A stretch of 64,000 bases of DNA from Octopus sinensis (Eukaryota), in contig NC_043011.1 in the NCBI RefSeq assembly GCF_006345805.1, positions 43,164,464 to 43,228,463 of the forward strand. Reading direction: 5' to 3'. This document shows, piece by piece, positions 12,403 to 58,950 of the stretch (position 1 is its first letter; each line of letters opens with the position of its first letter). Made by a program: the position numbers and the translations under genes. Under the pieces are notes generated by a model. The model was not told where the DNA came from. It did no database searches and saw nothing but the letters and a program-made list of their open reading frames with translations.

Positions 12403-13425
12403 TTATTTATAGATATATGTGTTTGTGTGTGTGTGTGAGTGTGTGTGCGTGTGAGCGAGTGTGTATGTACGTACGTATGTTCGTATGTGTACGAGTGATT
12501 ACTGCTATAGATTCAGAAGAAAGAATATTGCGTGTCGTGACGAATATATTTCTTCCAACAGCACAACTGAAACATTTAATCCAAGACTTTGATGTCACGG
12601 CTTCACACAATCAGTATGATAACGCTTGCTTACTTCAAAAGATTATTTTTCGAATACGAACTGGTTAAAAAGTGGTTCCTAATTTATCATCCTTTAACAA
12701 TTTTATAAAAGTTTTCTCTTCAGATCAACGCAAATGAAATTTCCGACTGACGGAGTCGATAAAATGGTAGATTACCGCCTGAAATCTCTGCGATTTGTTT
12801 ACTGTCATCAATATTGCATTTGCGTTCGAGCAAGAAATTTAACTCAGGTCAATCCACTCTATAAACTGAGAGTAAATAGTATATGATTGATAGTTACAGT
12901 TCACCACTTTAAGCAATTGTAGCATTGTAAGACTACATTTTGTCCTTCGCCAGAGCCTCGTTATATTTTTCGAGTGGGTATAGTTGACAGGCGGAGATAG
13001 ATTCCACCGTGCTGTGTTGATCAAGACGTCTGACGTAAAAACGAATTTTTCGAATGAGAACCAATGACAGCCATTAACTTTTAAGACATCACCGCTTCCC
13101 ATTACATCTGAAGCAATGAAGAAGTTGCTTTAAGTCATGTAGAGTTACGTAAGATCTGATCCTTAATGTATTTGTACCTTCGTTGAAAGATTTAAATGTA
13201 GACACAATATCGCTGTATCTCTGTATCGACCAGAAGTTGTTATATAATTCCTACTCTTCACATATCTAATTATAAGAAGATTTGTTTTTAAGAAGTGTGT
13301 TTGTTATGACTGCAATAGGCCTGGTTTTTAATGATCTGGAAACATTTCGATTTCAGATGCAGAATTCTATAAACACAGAAGAATCCGATTATATTGCGCG
13401 TTTACTAATTTTGAATATATATAAG

Positions 13426-14756: not shown

Positions 14757-16664
14757 CTTGACCATAGACGATGTACGGCAATAATGACACGATTGGAACC
14801 AGCAATCCTAGGCTAATTGGTTGCCATCTTATCTGCTCCGCCATTCAAATCTTTTTCAACGGGAAAATAGAGAAAAGATATAATTTGACCATGTTAACAC
14901 TTTGCAATGTGAAATTTGAATGCTGCAAGAATATTCTCATGAGAAAAAGTTGAAACTGAATTTCCGTTCTTCAAACATAGCAGTAATAAACATCTATCAA
15001 GCAGTGGGAAATGTGTTGAATGTTTCAATTCCGATACTTTCTGGTAATTTTTCTTCTCATTAAAAAGAATCACAACTGCCATACTCTGAGACAGATCACT
15101 ACTTGTAATCAGTGGATTCTAATCAACTAATTCCAATTAATTAATTAATTAATTAATTGCTTCAACTTCAGAGTTAATTAGCTTAACAGGTTATGGTTAT
15201 TAATTAAGTTTAAAATTATTAGGCTTATTGTATTAATAAGAGACATGCAAAAAGGTTTGAATTCTCATATAATGTCCATGCATTTCACCAATGGTTGTCC
15301 TTAGCGGTGCACATTCTATGGCAACTATTTGAGCCATGTTCTCGTTCTAAAGGTAACCAATGATTTGCAGTTGCTTCTATCATTTCTCAACTGGTCTTGA
15401 TAGTCTTGTACTACGTTATAGTAACCGCCCTTCTTAGGCTCACTAGACCATAAAAGGAAAGCAATAACGTTGAACAAAATTTTGTTCAGTCCTTGGATTT
15501 TGAAACTGCATATTCACTTCGACGAATTTGACACTGTGAATAGAGGCGAATCAGGGATTAAAAAGGCAATCATCGAATACCGAGAGGAAAGACGTAGTTA
15601 CAGTGCCATTCTGAATTACATTACTGTTCTATCTTCTCTATAAATATGCATGCACCTACAAGACATGCTAACGAGATAACACTATCAGTCAGAACTGAGT
15701 TTAAAAAATAAAGTACAAAATTTATGAAGATGTGATTTTAATGTAGAATGTACTGGAGATAGTATGTGATGTTCACATAACTTTGAGGATGTCTCACCAT
15801 GTTTGTTGGTTAATGGAAGTGTTATACCTCTCGTTGTAGAAACTGCTTTGCAAAATGACTGATCTATACATTCTGGCTTTAGCTAGAATTTACGTGATCA
15901 AAGTTGTTCGCCAGATATATATGCATACATACATACACACACATACATGCATACATACATGCGTAAATACATACAAAACCACAAAATCAAGAGGTATGAC
16001 AGGTGATTGTATATATATTTAACCGCGTGGCTCCCATGAGGTTACAGGCGTTTCGAAAGCTTCACGTAGTACAAAACTCATTAGTTAGCAGCACAATTCC
16101 CTTAGACCACAACTTGTGCTACTCATTGACATACATACTTACATTCACACTCACACTCACACATACACACACATACACTCACGCATACATACATGCACAC
16201 ACACGTCTATGCGCAGAACGTCCTTACGCAATTTCTAATAGTTTTGTATCAATTGTACGGTATTATTTCAAGAAAAAATATTTGCTATTTATAGCAGGTA
16301 GGGTGAATTTATAAAGCTACTATAAAGCTCTTAATAATAGTGACATAAGAAGCTGGAGTCAGATCATTTTAGCTTATACTGGGTATGACTTACAATTTAT
16401 ATTATTATTGATTTTGAGTCCAAGATGAGGACATAGCTAGCAGTTATGTGATCAAAGTCTTTACGAACAAGGCAATTGCCATCTATTTTCCTATAACACA
16501 TAGTTCACTTCACCTATTTACAATGAATGATAACAAGGAGTGTGATAAGAAGGAGAATTATACTGTATTTCTAGAAACTTACGCTTCTCCTTACCAACAA
16601 AAGAGTCCCTCGCTCTGTGTTTTACACAGCGCTTAAAGGTACTGGGAAACATGTGGTATGTATG

Positions 16665-16800
16665 TAAATAATGTGCAATATAAATGCAAATGATATGCAA
16701 TATAGAATGACTCATGTAATGTAAAATAATGTGCAATATAAATGCAAATGATATGCAATATAGAATGACTCATGTAATGTAAAATAATGTGCAATATAAA
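16665..16800. repeat. 58-bp minisatellite, about 2.3 copies
   Basis: AATAATGTGCAATAT at 16667, 16725, 16783. Confidence 0.9.
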
Positions 16801-16812
16801 ATGACCCAAATA

Positions 16813-16883
16813 TCTAATGTTTTCTTTTAATTTTTCTTACAGGTAAGTTCATTTTATTATCCTGTTATCCTAATAAGGTAAGT
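16813..16883 (+). promoter_or_regulatory. Candidate recursive splice site (3'SS fused to 5'SS) with 35-nt RS-exon
   Basis: TCTAAT branch-like motif, T-rich pyrimidine tract, CAG|GTAAGT at 16842/16843, second donor AAG|GTAAGT at 16877/16878. Confidence 0.5.
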
Positions 16884-16987
16884 GATATAAGTATATTTCT
16901 AAATTAAGCAGACATGCATATATGCATCTGCGTGAATATATGAACTCGCAAACATCTATACTTATATGCAAATGCATATTTGCATTA

Positions 16988-17068
<81 letters not shown>

Positions 17069-17113
17069 CTATATACATACATATATATATATGTATATTA
17101 TATATATTATATA

Positions 17114-17144
<31 letters not shown>

Positions 17145-17465
17145 AATAATATATGTATATAATATAATAATATATATATATATAATATATATAATATATA
17201 TAATATATATATATATTATATAATATATGTATATATATATATGTATATATATTATATACACATATGTCTCGGTCATTTAAGCATGCAGTGACCGACTAGT
17301 TGAGACACATTTAATACATGTGTTCATTTCTCTCTCCTCGTTCTATTCTTTCCGCAAAAGAGCATATGCACGAAACTTAAAGGATTTTCCTTCTACTTTT
17401 TGTTAATCGCTTTGTTTTTATTACCACGTCTTCGAGTATTTTCATTTTTAGTACTATATACATTG

Positions 17466-17517
<52 letters not shown>

Positions 17518-18133
17518 TATATATATATACATACATTTATGAATATGTACATGTCTATGTATATGCATGCAAACGTATGTCGATGTCCGTGTTTGTGTAT
17601 ATGTACAAGTAAAAGAGTATATAGCAGAATATTTAAAATGTCGGCTAAATGTTTTGTGCTATTTGCTGCCCCTTTTTACAGTGTGAGATCAGAACCCATT
17701 AAAACCAACTTTGCGTTTGACCCTTGTTGGCTCAATGAAATAAGATACCAGTCAATTATTATTGTCGATGTCATAGATTGACCCCTTCTATATGTGAGTG
17801 CGTGCGCGTGTGTTTGCGTGTGTGTATGTATATTCAGTTATAATAAAAATAACTTTACGTCAATGCAATGCGCTGGTCTAAAATTTTGTAGAGTACAAAT
17901 TAATTATTCTATTTAAAGAATGTCGATTACGAAGTTTCGGCCAGCTAAGCAGTACGACAATAGCCAAGATGACTGCAACTTTGAAGACACTGCTAACAAC
18001 ATTGTTGTCAAAGAATAATGAACAGATATCAAGAATATCTATATCTATATATCTATCTATATATATATACAAACACTTATACACACAAACATATAATATA
18101 TAGCATATAGACATATATACATGCACACACACA

Positions 18134-19322: not shown

Positions 19323-19356
<34 letters not shown>

Positions 19357-19397
19357 GTGTATATATGCATGTATGTATATATATATACATATCAACT

Positions 19398-19684
19398 GGC
19401 AGTCCGCCGTTTACGACGAAGCGTGTTCCAGTCGATTCGATCAATGGAACACCTTGCTCGTGAGATTAACGTGCACGTGGCTGACCACTCCACCGACACG
19501 CGTACCCCTTCACATATTTCTCTGAAAGATTCGGCGTGACCACCATGTTGCCTTGAAATACAGGTACCACTTATTTCTACCAGCGGTACCAATGTGAAAT
19601 AAAGTGTTTTGCGCAAGGAGAAAATTCAACGCGTGGAATTGTACTCGCGACCCTACGATTGCGAGCTGAATACCCTAACCGCGT
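19398..19684 (-). mobile_element. SINE family C, old copy of the alternative-head subtype
   Basis: CTCGTGAGATTAACGTGCACGTGGCTGACCACTCC and TTGAAATACAGGTAC...GTGAAATAAAGTGTTTTGCGCAAG. Confidence 0.8.
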
Positions 19685-19943
19685 TTTTATACACGTAGTA
19701 CGAGTTGTTTCTACAGATATATATGAAACTGGGGTCTGTTGTATATTTACAATATGCTTCACTATTATGGCGCTGATCGCGATGGCTATACCACACTGAA
19801 TATTATTTATAACAAAGTATCAACAGTTTATATTTTACGTGTATTAATTATTCATGAGCAGTAATGTAGATGTGAAAATATTCTCTATGAGACACCATGC
19901 CTGTATTAGCTCAATTCCTATCGACAACGTTACCGACAGTAAT

Positions 19944-20511
19944 CTTTTCTACTCTAGGCACAAGGCCCGAAATTTGGGGGGAATAGATCGATTAGATCGA
20001 CCCCAGTACGCAACTGGTACTTAATTTTATCGACCCCGAAAGGATGAAAGGCAAAGTCGACCTCGATTATATCGACCCCAGTGCGTAAATGGTACTTAAT
20101 TTATCGACCCCGAAAGGATGAAAGGCAAAGTCGACCTTTGAACTCAGAACGTAACGGCAGACGAAATACCTATTTCTTTACTACCCATAAGGGGCTAAAC
20201 ACAGAGGAGACAAACAAGGACCGACAGGCGGATTAAGTCGATTATATCGACCCCAGTATGTAACGGCAGACGAAATACCTATTTCTTTATTACCCACAAG
20301 GGGCTAAACACAGAGGGGACAAACAAGGACAGACATAGGTATTAAGTCGATTACATCGACCCCAGTGCGTAACTGGTACTTAATTTATCGACCCCGAAAG
20401 GATGAAAGGCAAAGTCGACCTCGGCAGAATTCGAACTCACAACGTAACGCAGACGAAATACCGCTAAGCATTTCGCCCAGCGTTCTAACGTTTCTACCAG
20501 ATCACCGCTTT
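19944..20511 (-). mobile_element. SINE family B with internal tandem units
   Basis: Several GACCCCGAAAGGATGAAAGGCAAAGTCGACC units; TSD AACGTTACCGACA(G/A)TAAT at 19926-19943 and 20512-20529. Confidence 0.93.
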
Positions 20512-21571
20512 AACGTTACCGACAATAATAGCTAGAGTTTGCCGTTGCATCTTGTTATTTTAATGTTTTACTGCTTTTAAATATTATAGTATTTCAATAT
20601 TTATCTCATGGGAATCATGTATAATTCTGAAGCCACTTATACGATTGTCTAACATAATGAAATATTGCAAAACATACGATAATTATGACATGAATAACCT
20701 TCGAGAATTACCAATTATTTATTGATGTTGAAACTTCTAAATACCAAATTTGGTCATTTACAAACATTATACCTTGACAATGAGTTAACAGATTCATTCC
20801 TGAGACTTACACCTCAGTTATTCATGAACTATTGTTACTTATTGTTATTTAATTCTGATAGCGTCTCTGAGTTATTAACTTCATTTAAAAGTAAAGTATG
20901 TATGCCAACTTTTCAAACCTACAGGTGTACATCTACATAATTATTTTATTATACTTATTTCAGTAAGTACATTCAAGTTTGTGTTTCACCGAGGAAGTCA
21001 TATAAGCCCAAAATGTGTGTGGAATTGCTCCTTGCACTTGTCTGAAGTATCTAAATAATATCAGTTATTAAAGCAATGCTATCTTTTCTTTACTGTATGA
21101 GTATTTTAATAAGATTTTTCACGCTCAAAATGCTACAACCAACCTAACTACAGCCTACCATGCTGATGGCTTTACTCTGTTTTCAATATTCCAGATATAT
21201 TCTGCAATATATATAGGTATATGCTCAGGACGAATACCGCAGGTAATTTGGCCTCCCGTGATGCATTTGCATTAAGTACATACACAAATTACTATTTTAA
21301 ACTAATACTGCTTCCGTTGCACTTTGCAAATTTTTATACAGCAGGCCAGTTAAATATTACATTAGTAATTTTTGAATCATAGTTTTCCTATATCAGCAAT
21401 GACGAATTTCGATTTAGCATGCAGCTACCAGTGAATACTTGCTACTGACAAAGCCTCAAAAGCAGACATGCACATCTTACATTCTCACAACCGTTGCTGT
21501 ACGATCTTCGTCTGCTACAGACATATTTTTTTGTTTTCGTATTTTTTTTTAACATTGTGCATCTATAAAAT

Positions 21572-22361: not shown

Positions 22362-22689
22362 GTATAAATTATAGGCACGTAGTTGAACAGATGTATGATA
22401 AAAAGAGATAGGACAAAAGGGTATATATACACACCATAGACGGAAGTCTCAATAAAAAAATTGTGGTAAAAAGGAAAAGTTTCCAGTCAAATCTAACGAC
22501 TGAGAGGTATCGGAGACGTTCCCTCTATATATGAGTATGAAAATTAGAATTAAAGCTCCATATACGTAGCGTCGGGCAAATAAATATTAGAAATGTCTAA
22601 TGGGGAGACAATACAGGATTTTAATTGAAATTAGGAGTAACCATTGAAATCAGTTCGTAGTATAAAGTATTTTTTAAAAATTCTATACA

Positions 22690-23114
22690 TAGGCGCAGGA
22701 GTGGCTGTGTGGTAAGTAGCTTGCTTACCAACCACATGGTTCCGGGTTCAGTCCCACTGCGTGGCATCTTGGGCAAGTGTCTTCTGCTATAGCCTTGAGC
22801 CGACCAATGCCTTGTGAGTGGATTTGGTAGACGGAAACTGAAAGAAGCCAGTCGTATATATGTAGATATATATATATGTGTGTGTGTGTGTTTGTGTGTC
22901 TGTGTTTGTCCCCCTAGCATTGCTTGACAACCGATGCTGGTGTGTTTACATCCCCGTCACTTAGCGGTTCGGCAAAAAGAGACTGATAGAATAAGTACTG
23001 GGCTTACAAAGAATAAGTCCCGGGGTTGATTTGCTCGACTAAAGGCGATGCTCCAGCATGGCCGCAGTCAAATGACTGAAACAAGTAAAAGATAAAAAAG
23101 ATAAAAGAAAGATA
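22690..23114 (+). mobile_element. SINE family A, full length
   Basis: TAGGCGCAGGAGTGGCTGTGTGG head through AAGTAAAAGATAAAA tail. Confidence 0.93.
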
Positions 23115-38519: not shown

Positions 38520-38780
38520 TATACACACATATATGCATTTATTATATGTCTACATATACATAGACATTTATATACATGCATATACATATATGTATGTATA
38601 TATATATATATATATAGGTGTATATAGGTATATATATATAGATATATATATATGTATATGTATATATATGTGTGTATATACATATATGTGCGTGTGTGTG
38701 TGTGTCTGTGTAGTTATTTATTACATATCTAAGATGATAAATATGTATATACACACGCACAAGCACACACACAGAAACAT

Positions 38781-38831
<51 letters not shown>

Positions 38832-39096
38832 TGTATACACACATATATGCATTTATTATATGTCTACATATACATAGACATTTATATACATGCATATACA
38901 TATATGTATGTATATATATATATATATATATAGGTGTATATAGGTATATATATATAGATATATATATATGTATATGTATATATATGTGTGTATATACATA
39001 TATGTGCGTGTGTGTGTGTGTCTGTGTAGTTATTTATTACATATCTAAGATGATAAATATGTATATACACACGCACAAGCACACACACAGAAACAT

Positions 39097-39110
<14 letters not shown>
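38520..39110. repeat. 314-bp tandem duplication of a compound microsatellite block
   Basis: GCATTTATTATATGTCTAC at 38535 and 38849; CATATCTAAGATGATAAATATG also duplicated. Confidence 0.9.
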
Positions 39111-39139
<29 letters not shown>

Positions 39140-51921: not shown

Positions 51922-52146
51922 TACTCTTTACTCTTTACTATCTTTTACTTGTTTCAGTAATGTGACTGTGGCCATGCTGGAGCACCGACTTTAGTCGAGC
52001 AAATCGACCCCAGGACATATTCTTTGTAAGCCTAGTACTCATTCTATCGGTCTCTCTTTCCGAACCGCTAGTTTACGAGGACGTAAACACACCGGCATCG
52101 GTTGTCAAGCGATTTTGGGGGAACAAACAGAGACACACAAACACAT

Positions 52147-52228
<82 letters not shown>

Positions 52229-52391
52229 GACGGGCTTCTTTCAGTTTCCGTCTACCAATCCACTCACAAGGCTTTGGTCGGCCCGAGGCTATAGTAGAAG
52301 ACGCTTGCCCAAGGTGCCACGCAGTGGGACTGAACCTGGAACCATGTGGTTCGTAAGCAAGGTACATACCACACAGCCACTCCTACGCCTA
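51922..52391 (-). mobile_element. SINE family A, full length with long internal (TA)n
   Basis: Complete head and tail; about 75-bp TA tract at 52155-52228. Confidence 0.93.
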
Positions 52392-53079
52392 TTCATTGAT
52401 ATATAAACATTGGGTCGGATAAATGAGAAGCTTTACGCAATATGATCGCGTTAGTATTTTAGATAAAAGCAAATAAATATAACTAAAACATACGTAGTAG
52501 TTTATTGAAGCTTCATAAACTGTTACCTTGGGTTTCATCGATTATCATTAAATATTTAGAACAAAGCAATAGTTTATAAATAGTTATATGTATTTATTTG
52601 TATTTGCAATCATCCATCACTACCAATTCATCGAATCAAGCTGACAGGGCATGGCAATTGATTTTCATAAAAAAATTGAGAGAATGAGAAAAACCTTTCC
52701 AGAAATATAATGGTGTAAATAATAAAAATTAGAATATAAATAGAAACTATGATTAAAAAGTTTTGAATTAATGTGAGAAAATTTGTATCATTTATAATTT
52801 CCAATCTTAATTTTCATTTTAATTCCAATTTTTAGCGAATACAGTAATTTATTTCTGATAATGTCGTTCTCATTCTCTATATTATATATGCCCGTTTCAA
52901 CATGTATACACGGTTTCACTTTTTATATTTTTAAATGTTATCTCCATTTTGACTGGCGTCAATTTATATAATTTTCTGTTACGCTAAATCACTTTTCCTT
53001 CAACGGGTTCTCGGTATTTTGAAAGGCATTTGCCCTGACCAATCAGTTTCAAGCGTTTATTCGATTATTCTGCAATTCT

Positions 53080-53655
53080 GGTGGTGAGCTGTCAGAAGCG
53101 TTAGCACGCCAGGCATTTCGTATGCCGTTACGTTCTGAGTTCAAATTCCGCCGAGGTCGACTTTGCCTTTCATCCTTTCGGGGTCGATAAATTAAGTACC
53201 AATTACGCACTGGAGTCGATGTAATCGTCTTAATCCCTCTGGTTGTCCTTGTTTTTCCACTCTATGTTTAGCCTCTTGAGGGTAGTAAAGAAATAGGTAT
53301 TTTGTCTGCCGCTACGTTCTGAGTTCAAAATCCGCCGAGGTCTACTTTGCTTTTCATCCTTTTGGGGTCGATTAAATAAGTACGATTACGCACTGGGGTC
53401 GATGTAATCGACTTAATCCTTTTGTCTGTCCTTGCTTGTCCCCCCTGTGTGTCCCCTTGCTTGTCCCCTTGTAGGCAGTAAAGAAATAAGAAACGTTAGC
53501 ATGCCGGGCGACATGCTTAGCGGTATTTAGTCTGCCGCTACGTTCTGAGTTCAAATTCCGCCGAGGTCGACTTTGCTCTTCATCCTTTGGAGGTCGATTA
53601 ATTAAGTACCAGTTGCGTCCTGGGGTCTATCTAATCGACTGCCCCCTCCCCAAAG
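53080..53655 (+). mobile_element. SINE family B with three internal units
   Basis: Three GTTCTGAGTTCAAA(T/A)TCCGCCGAGG units; third preceded by a partial head. Confidence 0.92.
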
Positions 53656-53792
53656 TATGAAAGTATATCTATATAAGAGAATGTGTGCGTGTATGTCTAC
53701 AAAGCCTGTTACACCAGGTGATACTCTCTCAACATCTCTAGAGTTATTAATGACTACATGTACATATACACACATATTTAAATATACATATA

Positions 53793-54436
53793 TTCTTTCA
53801 TTCTTTTAGTTGCTTCAGTCATTTAACTGCAGCCATGTTAGAGCAGCACCTTAAAGGGTTTTAGTCGAAGAAATCGACCCCAGAACTTATTCTATGTGGT
53901 ACTTATTTTATCGTTTTCTTTTGCCGAGCCGCTATGTCACGGCGATATAAATATGCCATCATCGACTGTCAAGCGATAGTGGTGGGACAAACACACGCAC
54001 ACACACACACACATATATGTATATGTATATCATAAGAGCCCACAGGCGCCTGCCTACTAGAAAGAGAAGGTAATTCTATAGCTATCTAATATTATTTAAG
54101 TCTTGCAAACACCTACATTATTGTAGTTGTTATTAGCAGCTATTTATAGTTACCGCAGATAATAATAACAAAACTAATATCCATATAAATTTTCATTTCT
54201 GAATATTTACTCCTTATTACACACACACACACACCACACACACACACAGATACACACACATATATACATGTATGTATGTATACGACGGGCTTTTTTCAGT
54301 TTCCCACAACCAAATCCAGTCCCAGGGCTTTGGTTAGCCCGAAGCTATAGTAGAAGACACTTGCCCAAGGTGCCACGCAGTAGGACTGAACTCGGAACCA
54401 TTTGGCTGGAAAGAAAACTTCTTACCACACAGCCAT
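53793..54436 (-). mobile_element. SINE family A, tail (53793-54020) and head (54282-54436) separated by about 260 bp
   Basis: Both halves match family A in the same orientation. Confidence 0.75.
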
Positions 54437-56420: not shown

Positions 56421-57156
56421 GGATGCCTGTGGATGACTAAAAGTGATTTAAAACCGGAAACCGAGGTTCTAATCTGTGCTGCCCAAGAGCAAGCATTAAG
56501 AACCAATTTCATCAAATATAGAATAGACAACACATCAGAAAGTGATAAGTGGAGAATTTGTGGACAGAATGGTGAAACTGTTTGGCATATTACCAGTCAA
56601 TGTACGCCACTAGCCCAGAATGAATATAAGAGATGCCATGACAATATAGCAAGGATTGTCCATTGGACACTTTGCAACAAGTATGGACTTGACAGAACAA
56701 AAAAGTTGTACGAATATAAACTCGAAGTGCGGCCATGAGATGGAGAATAAGAAACTAGATATAGTGTTAATTGAGAAAGAAAGTAAACTATGTTGGACCA
56801 TAGATATAGCATGGCCAGCTGACAAGGTATGCGATAAGGACGAAAGAAAAGTCGATAGATATGACATGTTAACTTGGGAGGTTAAGCAGTTGTGATCGAT
56901 GAAAAAGGTGGTAGTAGTATCAATAATTGTCGGAGTCCTGCGAACAGTGAGTAAAAATCTTGAGAAGTACATGGAACAAATAGGGACTGCAATAAGTTTG
57001 GAGCACTTTCAGAAAACAGCACTGCTTGGAACTGGTCGAATACTCCGGATGGTGCTCGAAAAATAAGGGGTGTTACTTTAGTTCACTAGTAGAGAACAGC
57101 TGGCACCGTTGTACATGTCCAACTTTAGAAGCTGTGCAAAGACAATAAATAATAAT
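56421..57156 (+). mobile_element. 5'-truncated R4/Dong-like non-LTR retrotransposon (CCHC knuckle, RLE endonuclease, 3' UTR)
   Basis: WMTKSDLKPETE..ICAAQEQALRTN...W(C)RICGQNGETVWHITSQC...HDNIARIVHWTLC...KLDIV..IDIAWP..KVDRY..IIVGVL..KTALLGTGRILRMVLEK*; frameshifts and an in-frame stop. Confidence 0.88.
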
Positions 57157-57372: not shown

Positions 57373-58645
57373 ATGATAACAAAATAAGCGGAATCTACAA
57401 TAGTGGTAGTCTGAGCGAACGAGAGCCAAGCTAACCTGCTGAAAACGAGCATCGATTTATCGTATAATACGCTGTACATAAATGGACACTCGGTTATGCA
57501 AAACCAGCTTATAAAAAAGATAACGTCTGCTGATAATGTAATAGTTATGTAATCAAAATTGTTAGATTTATCTACTTGCGATAAGTCCTTTCGCATCGTT
57601 AACACTCTGTCTGCGACTCAAGCCAGTTTCTTTCCTTTTATTTTTGGTTTTTATGAAGCAGGATATATTGAGTAGTGTTTTTCTCTTTTAAATGTATATT
57701 TTTTATGTTAACTGTTTATTAATAAAGTGGAATGAAATTGTTGGCTGGTTATGTTATGTCTAACATGACAAGAATATCAATAAGCATTTGAATTTATGAT
57801 GTTCTCTCCTCGCCCTTCTCATTCTTTCGATATATAAATATATACGAATATATATATGGATCTATGTGTGAGTGTGTGTGTAGTGGGGTGTATATATGAG
57901 TATAGAAAGAGAGAGAGAGAGAAAGAGAAAAAGAGAGAGTGAAGCAAAGAGAAAGTGTTTTATTTATGGAAGCTTTTGTTTTAATTATAGTTCCTTAATC
58001 TATAATATGCATACATAGAAATGTATGTTTCGAGCCATCAAACTATATATATGTACGTACGTATGTGCGAATGTACGTATGCATGTATATATGTATGATG
58101 TATGTATGTATGTATGTATGTACTTTTGCATGTATGTATATAGATAGATAGATAGACAGACAGACGGATGAACGGACGGACGGACAGACAGACAGACAGA
58201 TACATACATACATACATACATACATACATAGGTAGGTATGTATATATGTGTGTGTATGTGTTGATGTATGTATATACATATACATCATACGTGCATGCGC
58301 TTCCAACATAAATATGCATATACATAGACTTAGACTTGCATGCAAGCTCTCACATACATATGCATGAATTTATGTTCTTGTGAATATATCTGTTGTTTAA
58401 ACGACGCCAAACACAGTTTGCATTCGTACTGAGTATGGTGGCTATTTTTAATGGTACAGGAAACATCAATATAATCAAATAGCTAGAACATAACGGGAAC
58501 ACACTTTATTAGATGCTTCCCTACTCTTTTCGAAGATAAGCTTTCATAAAAATGATGTTAGTAATATGGGATCAGCTGGCTTCTGTCAATACGGGCTGTG
58601 TGGCGTTAATAGATTTACTTTAGCAGGAGCCAAGATACTTAGTAT

Positions 58646-58950
58646 ACTCTCTTTTACTCTTTTACTCGTTTCAGTCATTTGACTGTGGCCATGCTGGAGC
58701 ACCACCTTTAGTCGAGCAAATCGACCTCAGGACTTATTCTTTGTAAGCCTATTACTTATTCTATCGGTCTCTTTTTGCCAAACCTAGGTTACGGGGACGT
58801 AAACACACCAGCATCGGTTGTCAAGCGATGGGGGGCAAAGAACACAGACACACGAACATATACACAAACATATATACATATATACGACGGGCTTCTTTCA
58901 GTTTCCGTCTACCAAATCCACTCACAAGTCTTTGGTCGCCCCGAGGCTAT
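58646..58950 (-). mobile_element. SINE family A, lacking most of the head
   Basis: Tail and body match; stops at CCGAGGCTAT. Confidence 0.88.

What the first reader, a model, noticed from the sequence alone, without database searches (positions are those of the whole stretch)
16813..16883. Recursive-splicing ratchet point with a short RS-exon
Seen: TCTAAT, GTTTTCTTTTAATTTTTCTTAC, AG|GTAAGT, i.e. a full 3' splice site directly regenerating a consensus 5' splice site. A second AAG|GTAAGT lies 35 nt downstream. It was the only such strong junction I found on either strand. Established: this AG|GT architecture with a downstream cryptic donor marks recursive splicing in very long Drosophila and vertebrate neural introns. 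I do not know of it being characterised in cephalopods. It implies a plus-strand giant intron. Chance occurrence in AT-rich DNA is not excluded.
Basis: partly seen in the sequence, partly recalled or inferred. Interest (0 to 1): 0.7.

Follow-up and report, generated by a model that had tools for sequence, protein, structure and literature searches.

The report
Candidate recursive splice site, unverified
A textbook-perfect "acceptor joined to donor" splice motif with a second donor 35 bases downstream really is present on the plus strand and is unlikely to be pure chance. Whether it is used for stepwise (recursive) removal of a giant intron could not be tested, because no gene, transcript or related genome could be reached.

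Summary
These are the only two AGGTAAGT octamers in the window on either strand. The junction is the best AG|GT site by far, at 25.3 bits against 17.7 for the runner-up. Null models give 0.008-0.04 equally good junctions per 64-kb window, which is roughly 300-1,600 in a genome of a few Gb. Adding the strong downstream donor (P≈0.004) and a CTAAY branch motif at -25 (P≈0.03) lowers the chance expectation to well under one per thousand windows.

Every sequence-level criterion of a fly or vertebrate recursive site is met. These are the (Y)nNCAG|GTAAGT consensus, TT at -5/-6, and a short, out-of-frame RS-exon with its own donor. The site is not part of any repeat within the window.

The decisive criteria could not be tested: a plus-strand host intron, junction or lariat reads, and conservation. 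No coding exon, Pfam domain or strand asymmetry was found, and no related DNA was reachable. The organism is also unconfirmed.

Verdict: a good candidate for a known mechanism, probability about 0.4. Chance (about 0.35) and an ordinary cryptic or unannotated 35-nt exon (about 0.15) remain open. Interest is modest.

The parts
16813..16818 (+). Candidate branch-point motif TCTAAT. The branch A is at 16817, 25 nt upstream of G16842.
   Evidence: Read. A CTAAY motif with its A 18-40 nt upstream occurs at only 3.4% of window positions. No AG lies between 16763 and the acceptor AG, an AG-free stretch of 77 nt.
16819..16840 (+). Polypyrimidine tract GTTTTCTTTTAATTTTTCTTAC, with TT at -5/-6 and C at -3.
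   Evidence: 17 of the 20 bases before the AG are pyrimidines. The tract-only score is matched or beaten at 2.2% of all positions. TT at -5/-6 is present in 99.5% of Drosophila ratchet points (10.1101/006163).
16841..16848 (+). Ratchet junction AG|GTAAGT: acceptor AG 16841-16842 directly followed by the consensus donor GTAAGT 16843-16848.
   Evidence: Combined score 25.3 bits against 17.7 for the next best of 307 AGGT sites. It matches the published consensus (Y)nNCAG|GTAAGT (PMC5126111).
16843..16877 (+). Candidate cryptic RS-exon of 35 nt (GTAAGTTCATTTTATTATCCTGTTATCCTAATAAG).
   Evidence: The length is not a multiple of 3, and one of the three frames contains stop codons. [quoted passage not shown]
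16875..16883 (+). Downstream competing donor AAG|GTAAGT, with GT at 16878.
   Evidence: It scores 11.9 bits and is one of only 6 donors of at least that strength in 128 kb of strand. The chance of one falling 25-100 nt downstream of a given point is 0.0036.

Best explanation
The element is a plus-strand recursive splice site (ratchet point) with a 35-nt cryptic RS-exon, lying deep in a long intron.

Inferred mechanism:
1. U2AF and U2 recognise the TCTAAT branch motif, the T-rich tract and CAG at 16842. U1 binds the donor at 16878, so that 16843-16877 is defined as a tiny exon.
2. The upstream exon is ligated to G16843, which removes the first part of the intron as a lariat.
3. That ligation rebuilds a consensus donor, xAG|GTAAGT, at the new junction. 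This donor competes with the one at 16878.
4. Use of the rebuilt donor removes the 35 nt together with the rest of the intron, so nothing from here reaches the mRNA. Use of the 16878 donor would include a frame-shifting 35-nt exon.

What is shown here: the sequence architecture and its statistical rarity. What is inferred: transcription of this strand, the host intron, and every splicing step.
For: - The motif is an exact match to (Y)nNCAG|GTAAGT and has the TT at -5/-6 typical of fly ratchet points.
- It is the best AG|GT junction in the window by 7.6 bits.
- The junction alone is expected 0.008-0.04 times per window by chance.
- The second perfect AG|GTAAGT 35 nt downstream has a chance probability of 0.0036, and a downstream donor bounding a short RS-exon is what the RS-exon model predicts.
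- A CTAAY branch motif lies at -25 (chance 0.034) and the preceding 77 nt are free of AG.
- The 35-nt length is out of frame, like fly cryptic RS-exons.
- The segment is unique within the window and belongs to none of the three interspersed-repeat families.
- There is no recognisable coding exon in 64 kb, which is compatible with a very long intron.
Against: - There is no evidence that the plus strand is transcribed or that the window lies in a gene. The absence of exons fits intergenic DNA just as well.
- There is no strand asymmetry in base composition or in AATAAA counts.
- Conservation, a hallmark of real sites, could not be examined.
- The site sits between a 58-bp minisatellite (16658-16800) and a (TA)n array (16990-17258), which is a fast-evolving neighbourhood.
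- Recursive sites can be very rare. Only about 20 were found in mouse brain, all in introns above 51 kb of genes above 294 kb. Several hundred or more equally good junctions are expected by chance in a large AT-rich genome.
- The two donors are almost equally strong (12.9 and 11.9 bits), so the rebuilt donor would not clearly win the competition.
- From my own knowledge, 35 nt is short for exon definition.
- The weight matrices are my approximations, not a trained cephalopod model.
Confidence: 0.4

Rival explanations
1. It is a chance juxtaposition. In AT- and T-rich, low-complexity DNA, a T-rich run happens to precede a CAGGTAAGT, and a second AGGTAAGT happens to lie nearby. The element has no function.
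For: - T-rich tracts this good precede 2.2% of all positions.
- The octamer count of 2 is close to the roughly 1.3 per strand that I calculated from base composition.
- The null models give 0.008-0.07 such junctions per window, that is hundreds to more than a thousand per genome of a few Gb.
- The finding was picked because it stood out, which is a selection effect.
- The site is flanked by a minisatellite and a (TA)n array.
- There are no signs of a gene or of strand-specific transcription.
Against: - The joint occurrence of the junction, a near-perfect donor 35 nt downstream (0.0036) and a CTAAY branch motif at the right distance (0.034) multiplies to about 1e-6 to 5e-6 per window under independence.
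- Even loose definitions (a donor of at least 8 bits, any YTNAY) give only about 1e-4 to 7e-4 per window.
- The two octamers are not copies of one another.
- None of 32 simulated chance junctions had the strong donor or the branch motif.
Confidence: 0.35
2. It is an ordinary short exon or cryptic pseudo-exon. On this reading 16843-16877 is a genuine 35-nt exon (alternative, poison or untranslated, or part of a non-coding RNA) that uses the acceptor at 16842 and the donor at 16878, and the GTAAGT at its start is incidental. One variant pairs the acceptor with the strong donor CAG|GTAGGG at 16298, giving a 545-nt intron in an unannotated plus-strand transcript.
For: - Both splice sites of the 35-nt segment are strong.
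- Three of the nine strongest donors in 128 kb of strand lie within 580 nt on the plus strand, at 16298, 16843 and 16878.
- In mouse, 46 of 84 AGGT sites with junction reads turned out to be unannotated exons, and 22 'RS-like cryptic exons' were found (PMC8797253).
Against: - By base composition, a GTAAGT hexamer at the first six bases of an exon is expected about 3e-4 of the time (my calculation).
- Once such an exon is joined to an upstream exon, it would regenerate a consensus donor and behave as an RS-exon in any case.
- The candidate upstream exon that would end at 16297 has only a weak acceptor (6.0 bits) and is low-complexity CA-rich sequence.
- The segment has no coding potential.
Confidence: 0.15
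3. The motif belongs to a mobile element or other dispersed repeat that carries splice signals, or it acts as a pair of U1-binding sites without being spliced (for example to suppress premature cleavage and polyadenylation).
For: About a quarter of the window is interspersed or simple repeats (007 bases masked). A repeat family with only one copy in 64 kb would not be detected by the self-comparison.
Against: - There is no second copy in the window.
- There are no terminal inverted repeats other than (TA)n.
- There is no Rfam or tRNA match.
- No canonical AATAAA or ATTAAA signal lies immediately around the site (read).
Confidence: 0.07

Closest known systems
Drosophila intronic ratchet points with cryptic RS-exons (Burnette 2005; Duff 2015; Joseph 2018/2021)
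   Same: It has the juxtaposed acceptor and donor consensus (Y)nNCAG|GTAAGT, TT at -5/-6, a prominent pyrimidine tract, a short out-of-frame cryptic exon ended by a second donor, and the expected donor competition.
   Different: The candidate RS-exon is 35 nt, against about 50 nt typically. The downstream donor is as strong as the ratchet donor. There is no evidence of a host intron, of use, or of the ultraconservation that marks fly sites. The organism is presumably a cephalopod, a group for which I found no report of recursive splicing.
Vertebrate RS-sites and RS-exons in long neural genes (Sibley 2015; Blazquez 2018; Moon and Zhao 2022)
   Same: It has the AGGTAAGT core, a strong pyrimidine tract, and an RS-exon defined by a downstream donor whose inclusion would shift the reading frame.
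   Different: Vertebrate sites lie in first or second introns above 51 kb in genes above 294 kb, are highly conserved, and number only tens in mouse. None of these properties could be checked here.
Unannotated or cryptic pseudo-exons that start with GT ('RS-like cryptic exons')
   Same: It is a short intronic segment with a usable acceptor and a strong downstream donor.
   Different: In the mouse RS-like cryptic exons the rebuilt donor is weak and only the downstream donor carries AGGTAAGT. Here both donors are consensus.

Membership tests
Recursive splice site / ratchet point | [quoted passage not shown] | tested here: met
   TTTTTCTTACAG|GTAAGT at 16842|16843. It is the top-scoring of 307 AGGT sites by 7.6 bits. 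The consensus is taken from PMC5126111.
Recursive splice site / ratchet point | TT at -5/-6 and a prominent pyrimidine tract (Drosophila, 99.5% of sites) | tested here: met
   T16837 and T16838 are at -6 and -5. 17 of the 20 upstream bases are pyrimidines.
Recursive splice site / ratchet point | A usable branch point upstream, with no intervening AG | tested here: met
   TCTAAT has its branch A 25 nt upstream, and the AG-free stretch is 77 nt. This is sequence level only; no lariat data are available.
Recursive splice site / ratchet point | A short cryptic RS-exon bounded by a downstream donor, usually out of frame | tested here: met
   The segment is 35 nt and ends at AAG|GTAAGT (11.9 bits). 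35 is not a multiple of 3. The criterion is taken from PMC8605326.
Recursive splice site / ratchet point | A rebuilt donor stronger than the RS-exon donor, so that the cryptic exon is skipped | tested here: inconclusive
   The scores are 12.9 and 11.9 bits with the genomic CAG in place. The real -3 to -1 bases would come from the unknown upstream exon.
Recursive splice site / ratchet point | Location inside a long intron transcribed from the same strand | not testable with these tools
   No annotation or cephalopod genome could be reached. The following all found nothing: 10 window ORFs in the exact look-up, the ORFs nearest the site in a protein search, a Pfam scan of 169 ORFs and two metagenome DNA scans. 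There is no strand asymmetry. The absence of exons is compatible with an intron but not diagnostic.
Recursive splice site / ratchet point | Splicing intermediates: junction reads to the site, lariats, and saw-tooth nascent-RNA coverage | not testable with these tools
   No RNA-seq data are accessible.
Recursive splice site / ratchet point | Strong evolutionary conservation of the AG|GT core relative to its flanks | not testable with these tools
   No orthologous sequence could be retrieved.

The most novel reading that the evidence does not exclude
The site is a working ratchet point in a giant cephalopod (presumably neural) gene. That would be the first recursive splice site described in a lophotrochozoan. 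It would also indicate that RS-exon-mediated recursive splicing with the same (Y)nNCAG|GTAAGT code predates the split between protostomes and deuterostomes and was retained wherever introns grew very long.
Probability: 0.35. Interest if true: 0.5.

Novelty: new member of a known kind. Interest (0 to 1): 0.3.

Why it matters
If it is real, it extends a known mechanism to a third major animal lineage, one noted for large genomes and long genes. Recursive splicing is so far documented in flies and vertebrates. The site would also give a concrete sequence template for a genome-wide scan: branch motif, T-tract, CAG|GTAAGT and a second donor within about 100 nt. Such a scan could be checked against public octopus total-RNA data. 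A single unverified motif does not change the present understanding of splicing.

Tried and rejected
- **Exact look-up.** Ten window ORFs were looked up in the 15-billion-protein collection and none was present.
- **Concatenated protein query.** A 4,953-aa query of 72 exon-like ORFs returned nothing. That negative result is uninformative: the reverse-transcriptase fragment contained in it gives E=7.7e-62 when searched alone. The word prefilter evidently loses sensitivity with long queries.
- **ORFs flanking the site.** A protein search with the ORFs at 16000-17778 found no homologues, so there was no route to orthologous DNA.
- **Metagenome DNA scans.** Two exact-pattern scans, one across the junction and one in the GC-richer flank at 16602-16631, found nothing.
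- **Pfam.** Ten ORFs and then 169 unique ORFs of at least 40 aa gave no hit above threshold.
- **Rfam and tRNA scans.** Both found nothing. This also excludes a minus-strand U1-like gene as the source of the ACTTACCTG complement.
- **Local duplication.** Rejected as the origin of the two octamers, because the flanks are unrelated.
- **Membership of a repeat family or a transposon with inverted ends.** Rejected within the limits of a 64-kb self-comparison.
- **Strand asymmetry.** Base skews and AATAAA and GTAAGT counts gave no usable signal of transcription direction.
- **Exon prediction.** Pairing acceptors and donors around open frames produced nothing convincing on either strand. An amino-acid-composition screen also produced nothing convincing.
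- **Organism identification.** The reverse-transcriptase relatives are unnamed ENA and Logan contigs, so they did not identify the organism.

Full report
**What is there.** The plus strand at 16813-16883 reads TCTAAT G TTTTCTTTTAATTTTTCTTAC AG|GTAAGT TCATTTTATTATCCTGTTATCCTAATAAG|GTAAGT. The acceptor AG ends at 16842. The first GTAAGT starts at 16843 and the second at 16878, 35 nt later. AGGTAAGT occurs only twice in the 64-kb window, both times here, and never on the minus strand.

**How unusual it is.** I scored every AG|GT junction on both strands with approximate metazoan acceptor and donor weight matrices. The frequencies are recalled from the literature, so the absolute values are rough.
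- The site scores 12.4 + 12.9 = 25.3 bits. The runner-up among 307 AGGT sites scores 17.7.
- Only 11 of 6,486 AG sites have an equal or better acceptor score, and only 2 of 7,540 GT sites an equal or better donor score.
- Markov models of the window give 0.003 (order 1), 0.027 (order 3) and 0.073 (order 5, over-fitted) equal or better junctions per window.
- With the site left out of training the figure is 0.02-0.04. Over 512 strand-Mb with an AGGTRAG prefilter it is 0.008.
- An empirical decomposition agrees at about 0.02. A tract this good precedes 2.2% of all positions, and the window holds one other donor of this strength.

The junction alone is therefore unusual for one window (roughly 1 to 4%). 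A genome of a few Gb would still hold some 300-1,600 such junctions by chance.

**The extra features.** Three further properties predicted by the recursive-splicing literature are present.
- A donor of at least 11.9 bits lies 35 nt downstream. Only six donors that strong exist in 128 kb of strand, so the chance of one falling 25-100 nt downstream is 0.0036, or 0.045 for any donor of at least 8 bits.
- TCTAAT places a CTAAY branch motif with its A 25 nt from the acceptor. That arrangement is found at 3.4% of positions. No AG occurs in the preceding 77 nt.
- TT occupies -5/-6, as in 196 of 197 Drosophila ratchet points (10.1101/006163).

None of the 32 simulated chance junctions had the strong donor or the branch motif, and one had a donor of at least 8 bits. 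The two octamers have unrelated flanks, so they are independent events and not a duplication. Under independence the whole architecture is expected about 1e-6 to 5e-6 times per window. With loose definitions the figure is 1e-4 to 7e-4.

**Surroundings.**
- The element lies in about 190 bp of unique sequence. Upstream is a 58-bp minisatellite (16658-16800, 2.5 copies, 97% matches) and downstream a long (TA)n array (16990-17258).
- It matches nothing else in the window and lies outside the three interspersed-repeat families found by self-comparison.
- Inverted repeats nearby are all (TA)n. There is no Rfam or tRNA hit anywhere in the window.
- The window is 34.5% G+C, is rich in microsatellites and SINE-like copies, and has a 100-N gap.
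- I found no convincing coding exon on either strand. Long ORFs are low-complexity or repeat-derived. Pairing of acceptors and donors around open frames gives nothing persuasive. Pfam finds nothing above threshold in 10 and then in 169 unique ORFs.
- The only protein-like piece is a frameshifted C-terminal fragment of a non-LTR retrotransposon reverse transcriptase at 56421-56892. Two of its relatives carry PF13966, and the gene next to the best relative carries RVT_1.
- Base skews and AATAAA counts show no strand bias.

The context is therefore compatible with a very long intron and equally with intergenic DNA.

**What could not be reached.** No tool gave access to a cephalopod genome, its annotation or its transcripts.
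- Exact look-ups of ten window ORFs failed.
- The ORFs nearest the site have no homologues in the protein collection.
- Two DNA scans of metagenome contigs were empty.
- A large concatenated protein query returned nothing but proved insensitive.

The organism itself is thus not confirmed. The three defining properties of a recursive site remain untested: a host intron on the same strand, splicing intermediates, and conservation.

**Comparison with what is known.** The sequence fits the Drosophila and vertebrate consensus (Y)nNCAG|GTAAGT (PMC5126111). It also fits the RS-exon model, in which a short cryptic exon of about 50 nt, poorly conserved and out of frame, is bounded by a second donor that competes with the regenerated one (PMC8605326). 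In mouse, true RS AGGT sites are distinguished from other AGGT sites by the AGGTAAGT core and strong pyrimidine tracts.

Several points argue for caution.
- Real recursive sites are few. About 20 were found in mouse brain, in introns above 51 kb of genes above 294 kb, and they are highly conserved (PMC8797253).
- More than half of the AGGT sites with junction reads in that study (46 of 84) were simply unannotated exons.
- Here the two donors are nearly equal in strength, so clean skipping of the 35 nt is not assured.
- From my own knowledge, 35 nt is short for exon definition.
- A third strong plus-strand donor lies at 16298, which hints that an unannotated plus-strand transcript is an alternative.

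**Weighing.** If recursive sites are as rare as in mouse, true sites and chance sites with this full architecture are about equally frequent genome-wide. If they are as common as reported for human or fly, true sites dominate. Allowing for the rough matrices, the unknown transcription status and the selection of this site because it stood out, I put the probabilities as follows:
- about 0.4 on a working recursive site;
- about 0.35 on chance;
- about 0.15 on an ordinary cryptic or unannotated short exon;
- the remainder on other origins.

I found no paper that combines recursive splicing with octopus, and only one that mentions both recursive splicing and cephalopods, each once and neither in its title or abstract. 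A confirmed site would therefore be a new member of a known kind in a new lineage. That would be of moderate interest and not surprising.

Noticed in passing
window 16658-16800 and 16900-16990: A 58-bp minisatellite (2.5 copies, 97% matches) lies directly upstream of the site. Each full copy carries the octamer ATGCAAAT, the classic POU/Oct recognition sequence. Four of the nine ATGCAAAT copies in the window (both strands) lie between 16684 and 16985. A 14-bp perfect palindrome, ATGCATATATGCAT, sits at 16914-16927. This may be no more than AT-rich low complexity.
   Followed up: partly
window 16298 (+): A third strong plus-strand donor, CAG|GTAGGG (11.0 bits), lies 545 nt upstream of the acceptor. 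Three of the nine strongest donors in 128 kb of strand therefore fall within 580 nt on one strand. The putative exon in front of it has only a weak acceptor and is CA-rich.
   Followed up: partly
window 56421-56892 (+): This is a frameshifted C-terminal fragment of a non-LTR retrotransposon reverse transcriptase. The best relative (64% identity, E=7.7e-62) lies on an unnamed 4.36-Mb ENA contig next to an RVT_1 gene, and two other relatives carry PF13966 (zf-RVT). A 132-aa open frame runs antisense to it at 56613-57008.
   Followed up: partly
window 905-1357, 3955-4380, 8000-8673, 22684-23100, 51925-52405, 53784-54435, 58633-58950: A SINE-like family of about 420-480 bp has at least seven copies at 72-90% identity in both orientations. 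Several copies end in microsatellites. ARAGORN detects no tRNA-like head.
   Followed up: partly
window 8734-9018, 10779-11166, 11296-11630, 26828-27221 (also 6149-6331, 19325-19675): A second repeat family of about 290-390 bp reaches 97% identity between copies, which points to recent activity or duplication. Two copies in opposite orientation (10779-11166 and 11296-11630) help to make 10-12 kb the most GC-rich block of the window (46%).
   Followed up: no
window 9685-10744, 19936-20519, 33558-34128, 53080-53670 and shorter pieces at 13420, 35763, 36491, 37245 and 40345: A third family is built from units of roughly 180 bp that are repeated in tandem within each copy. It is present in both orientations.
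   Followed up: no
window 38465-39115: A direct tandem duplication of about 335 bp at 98.5% identity (38465-38800 and 38781-39115) lies inside microsatellite-rich sequence.
   Followed up: no
window 40085 (-) and 40209 (+): The same strong donor-like string, CCG|GTGAGTGT, occurs on opposite strands 124 bp apart. This implies a short inverted repeat.
   Followed up: no
window 31065-31164: A run of 100 N marks an assembly gap. The surrounding 2 kb has the lowest G+C of the window (24%).
   Followed up: no
method note: the search for homologous proteins missed a fragment that scores E=7.7e-62 on its own when that fragment was embedded in a 4,953-aa concatenated query. Negative results from long concatenated queries should not be trusted.
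   Followed up: yes
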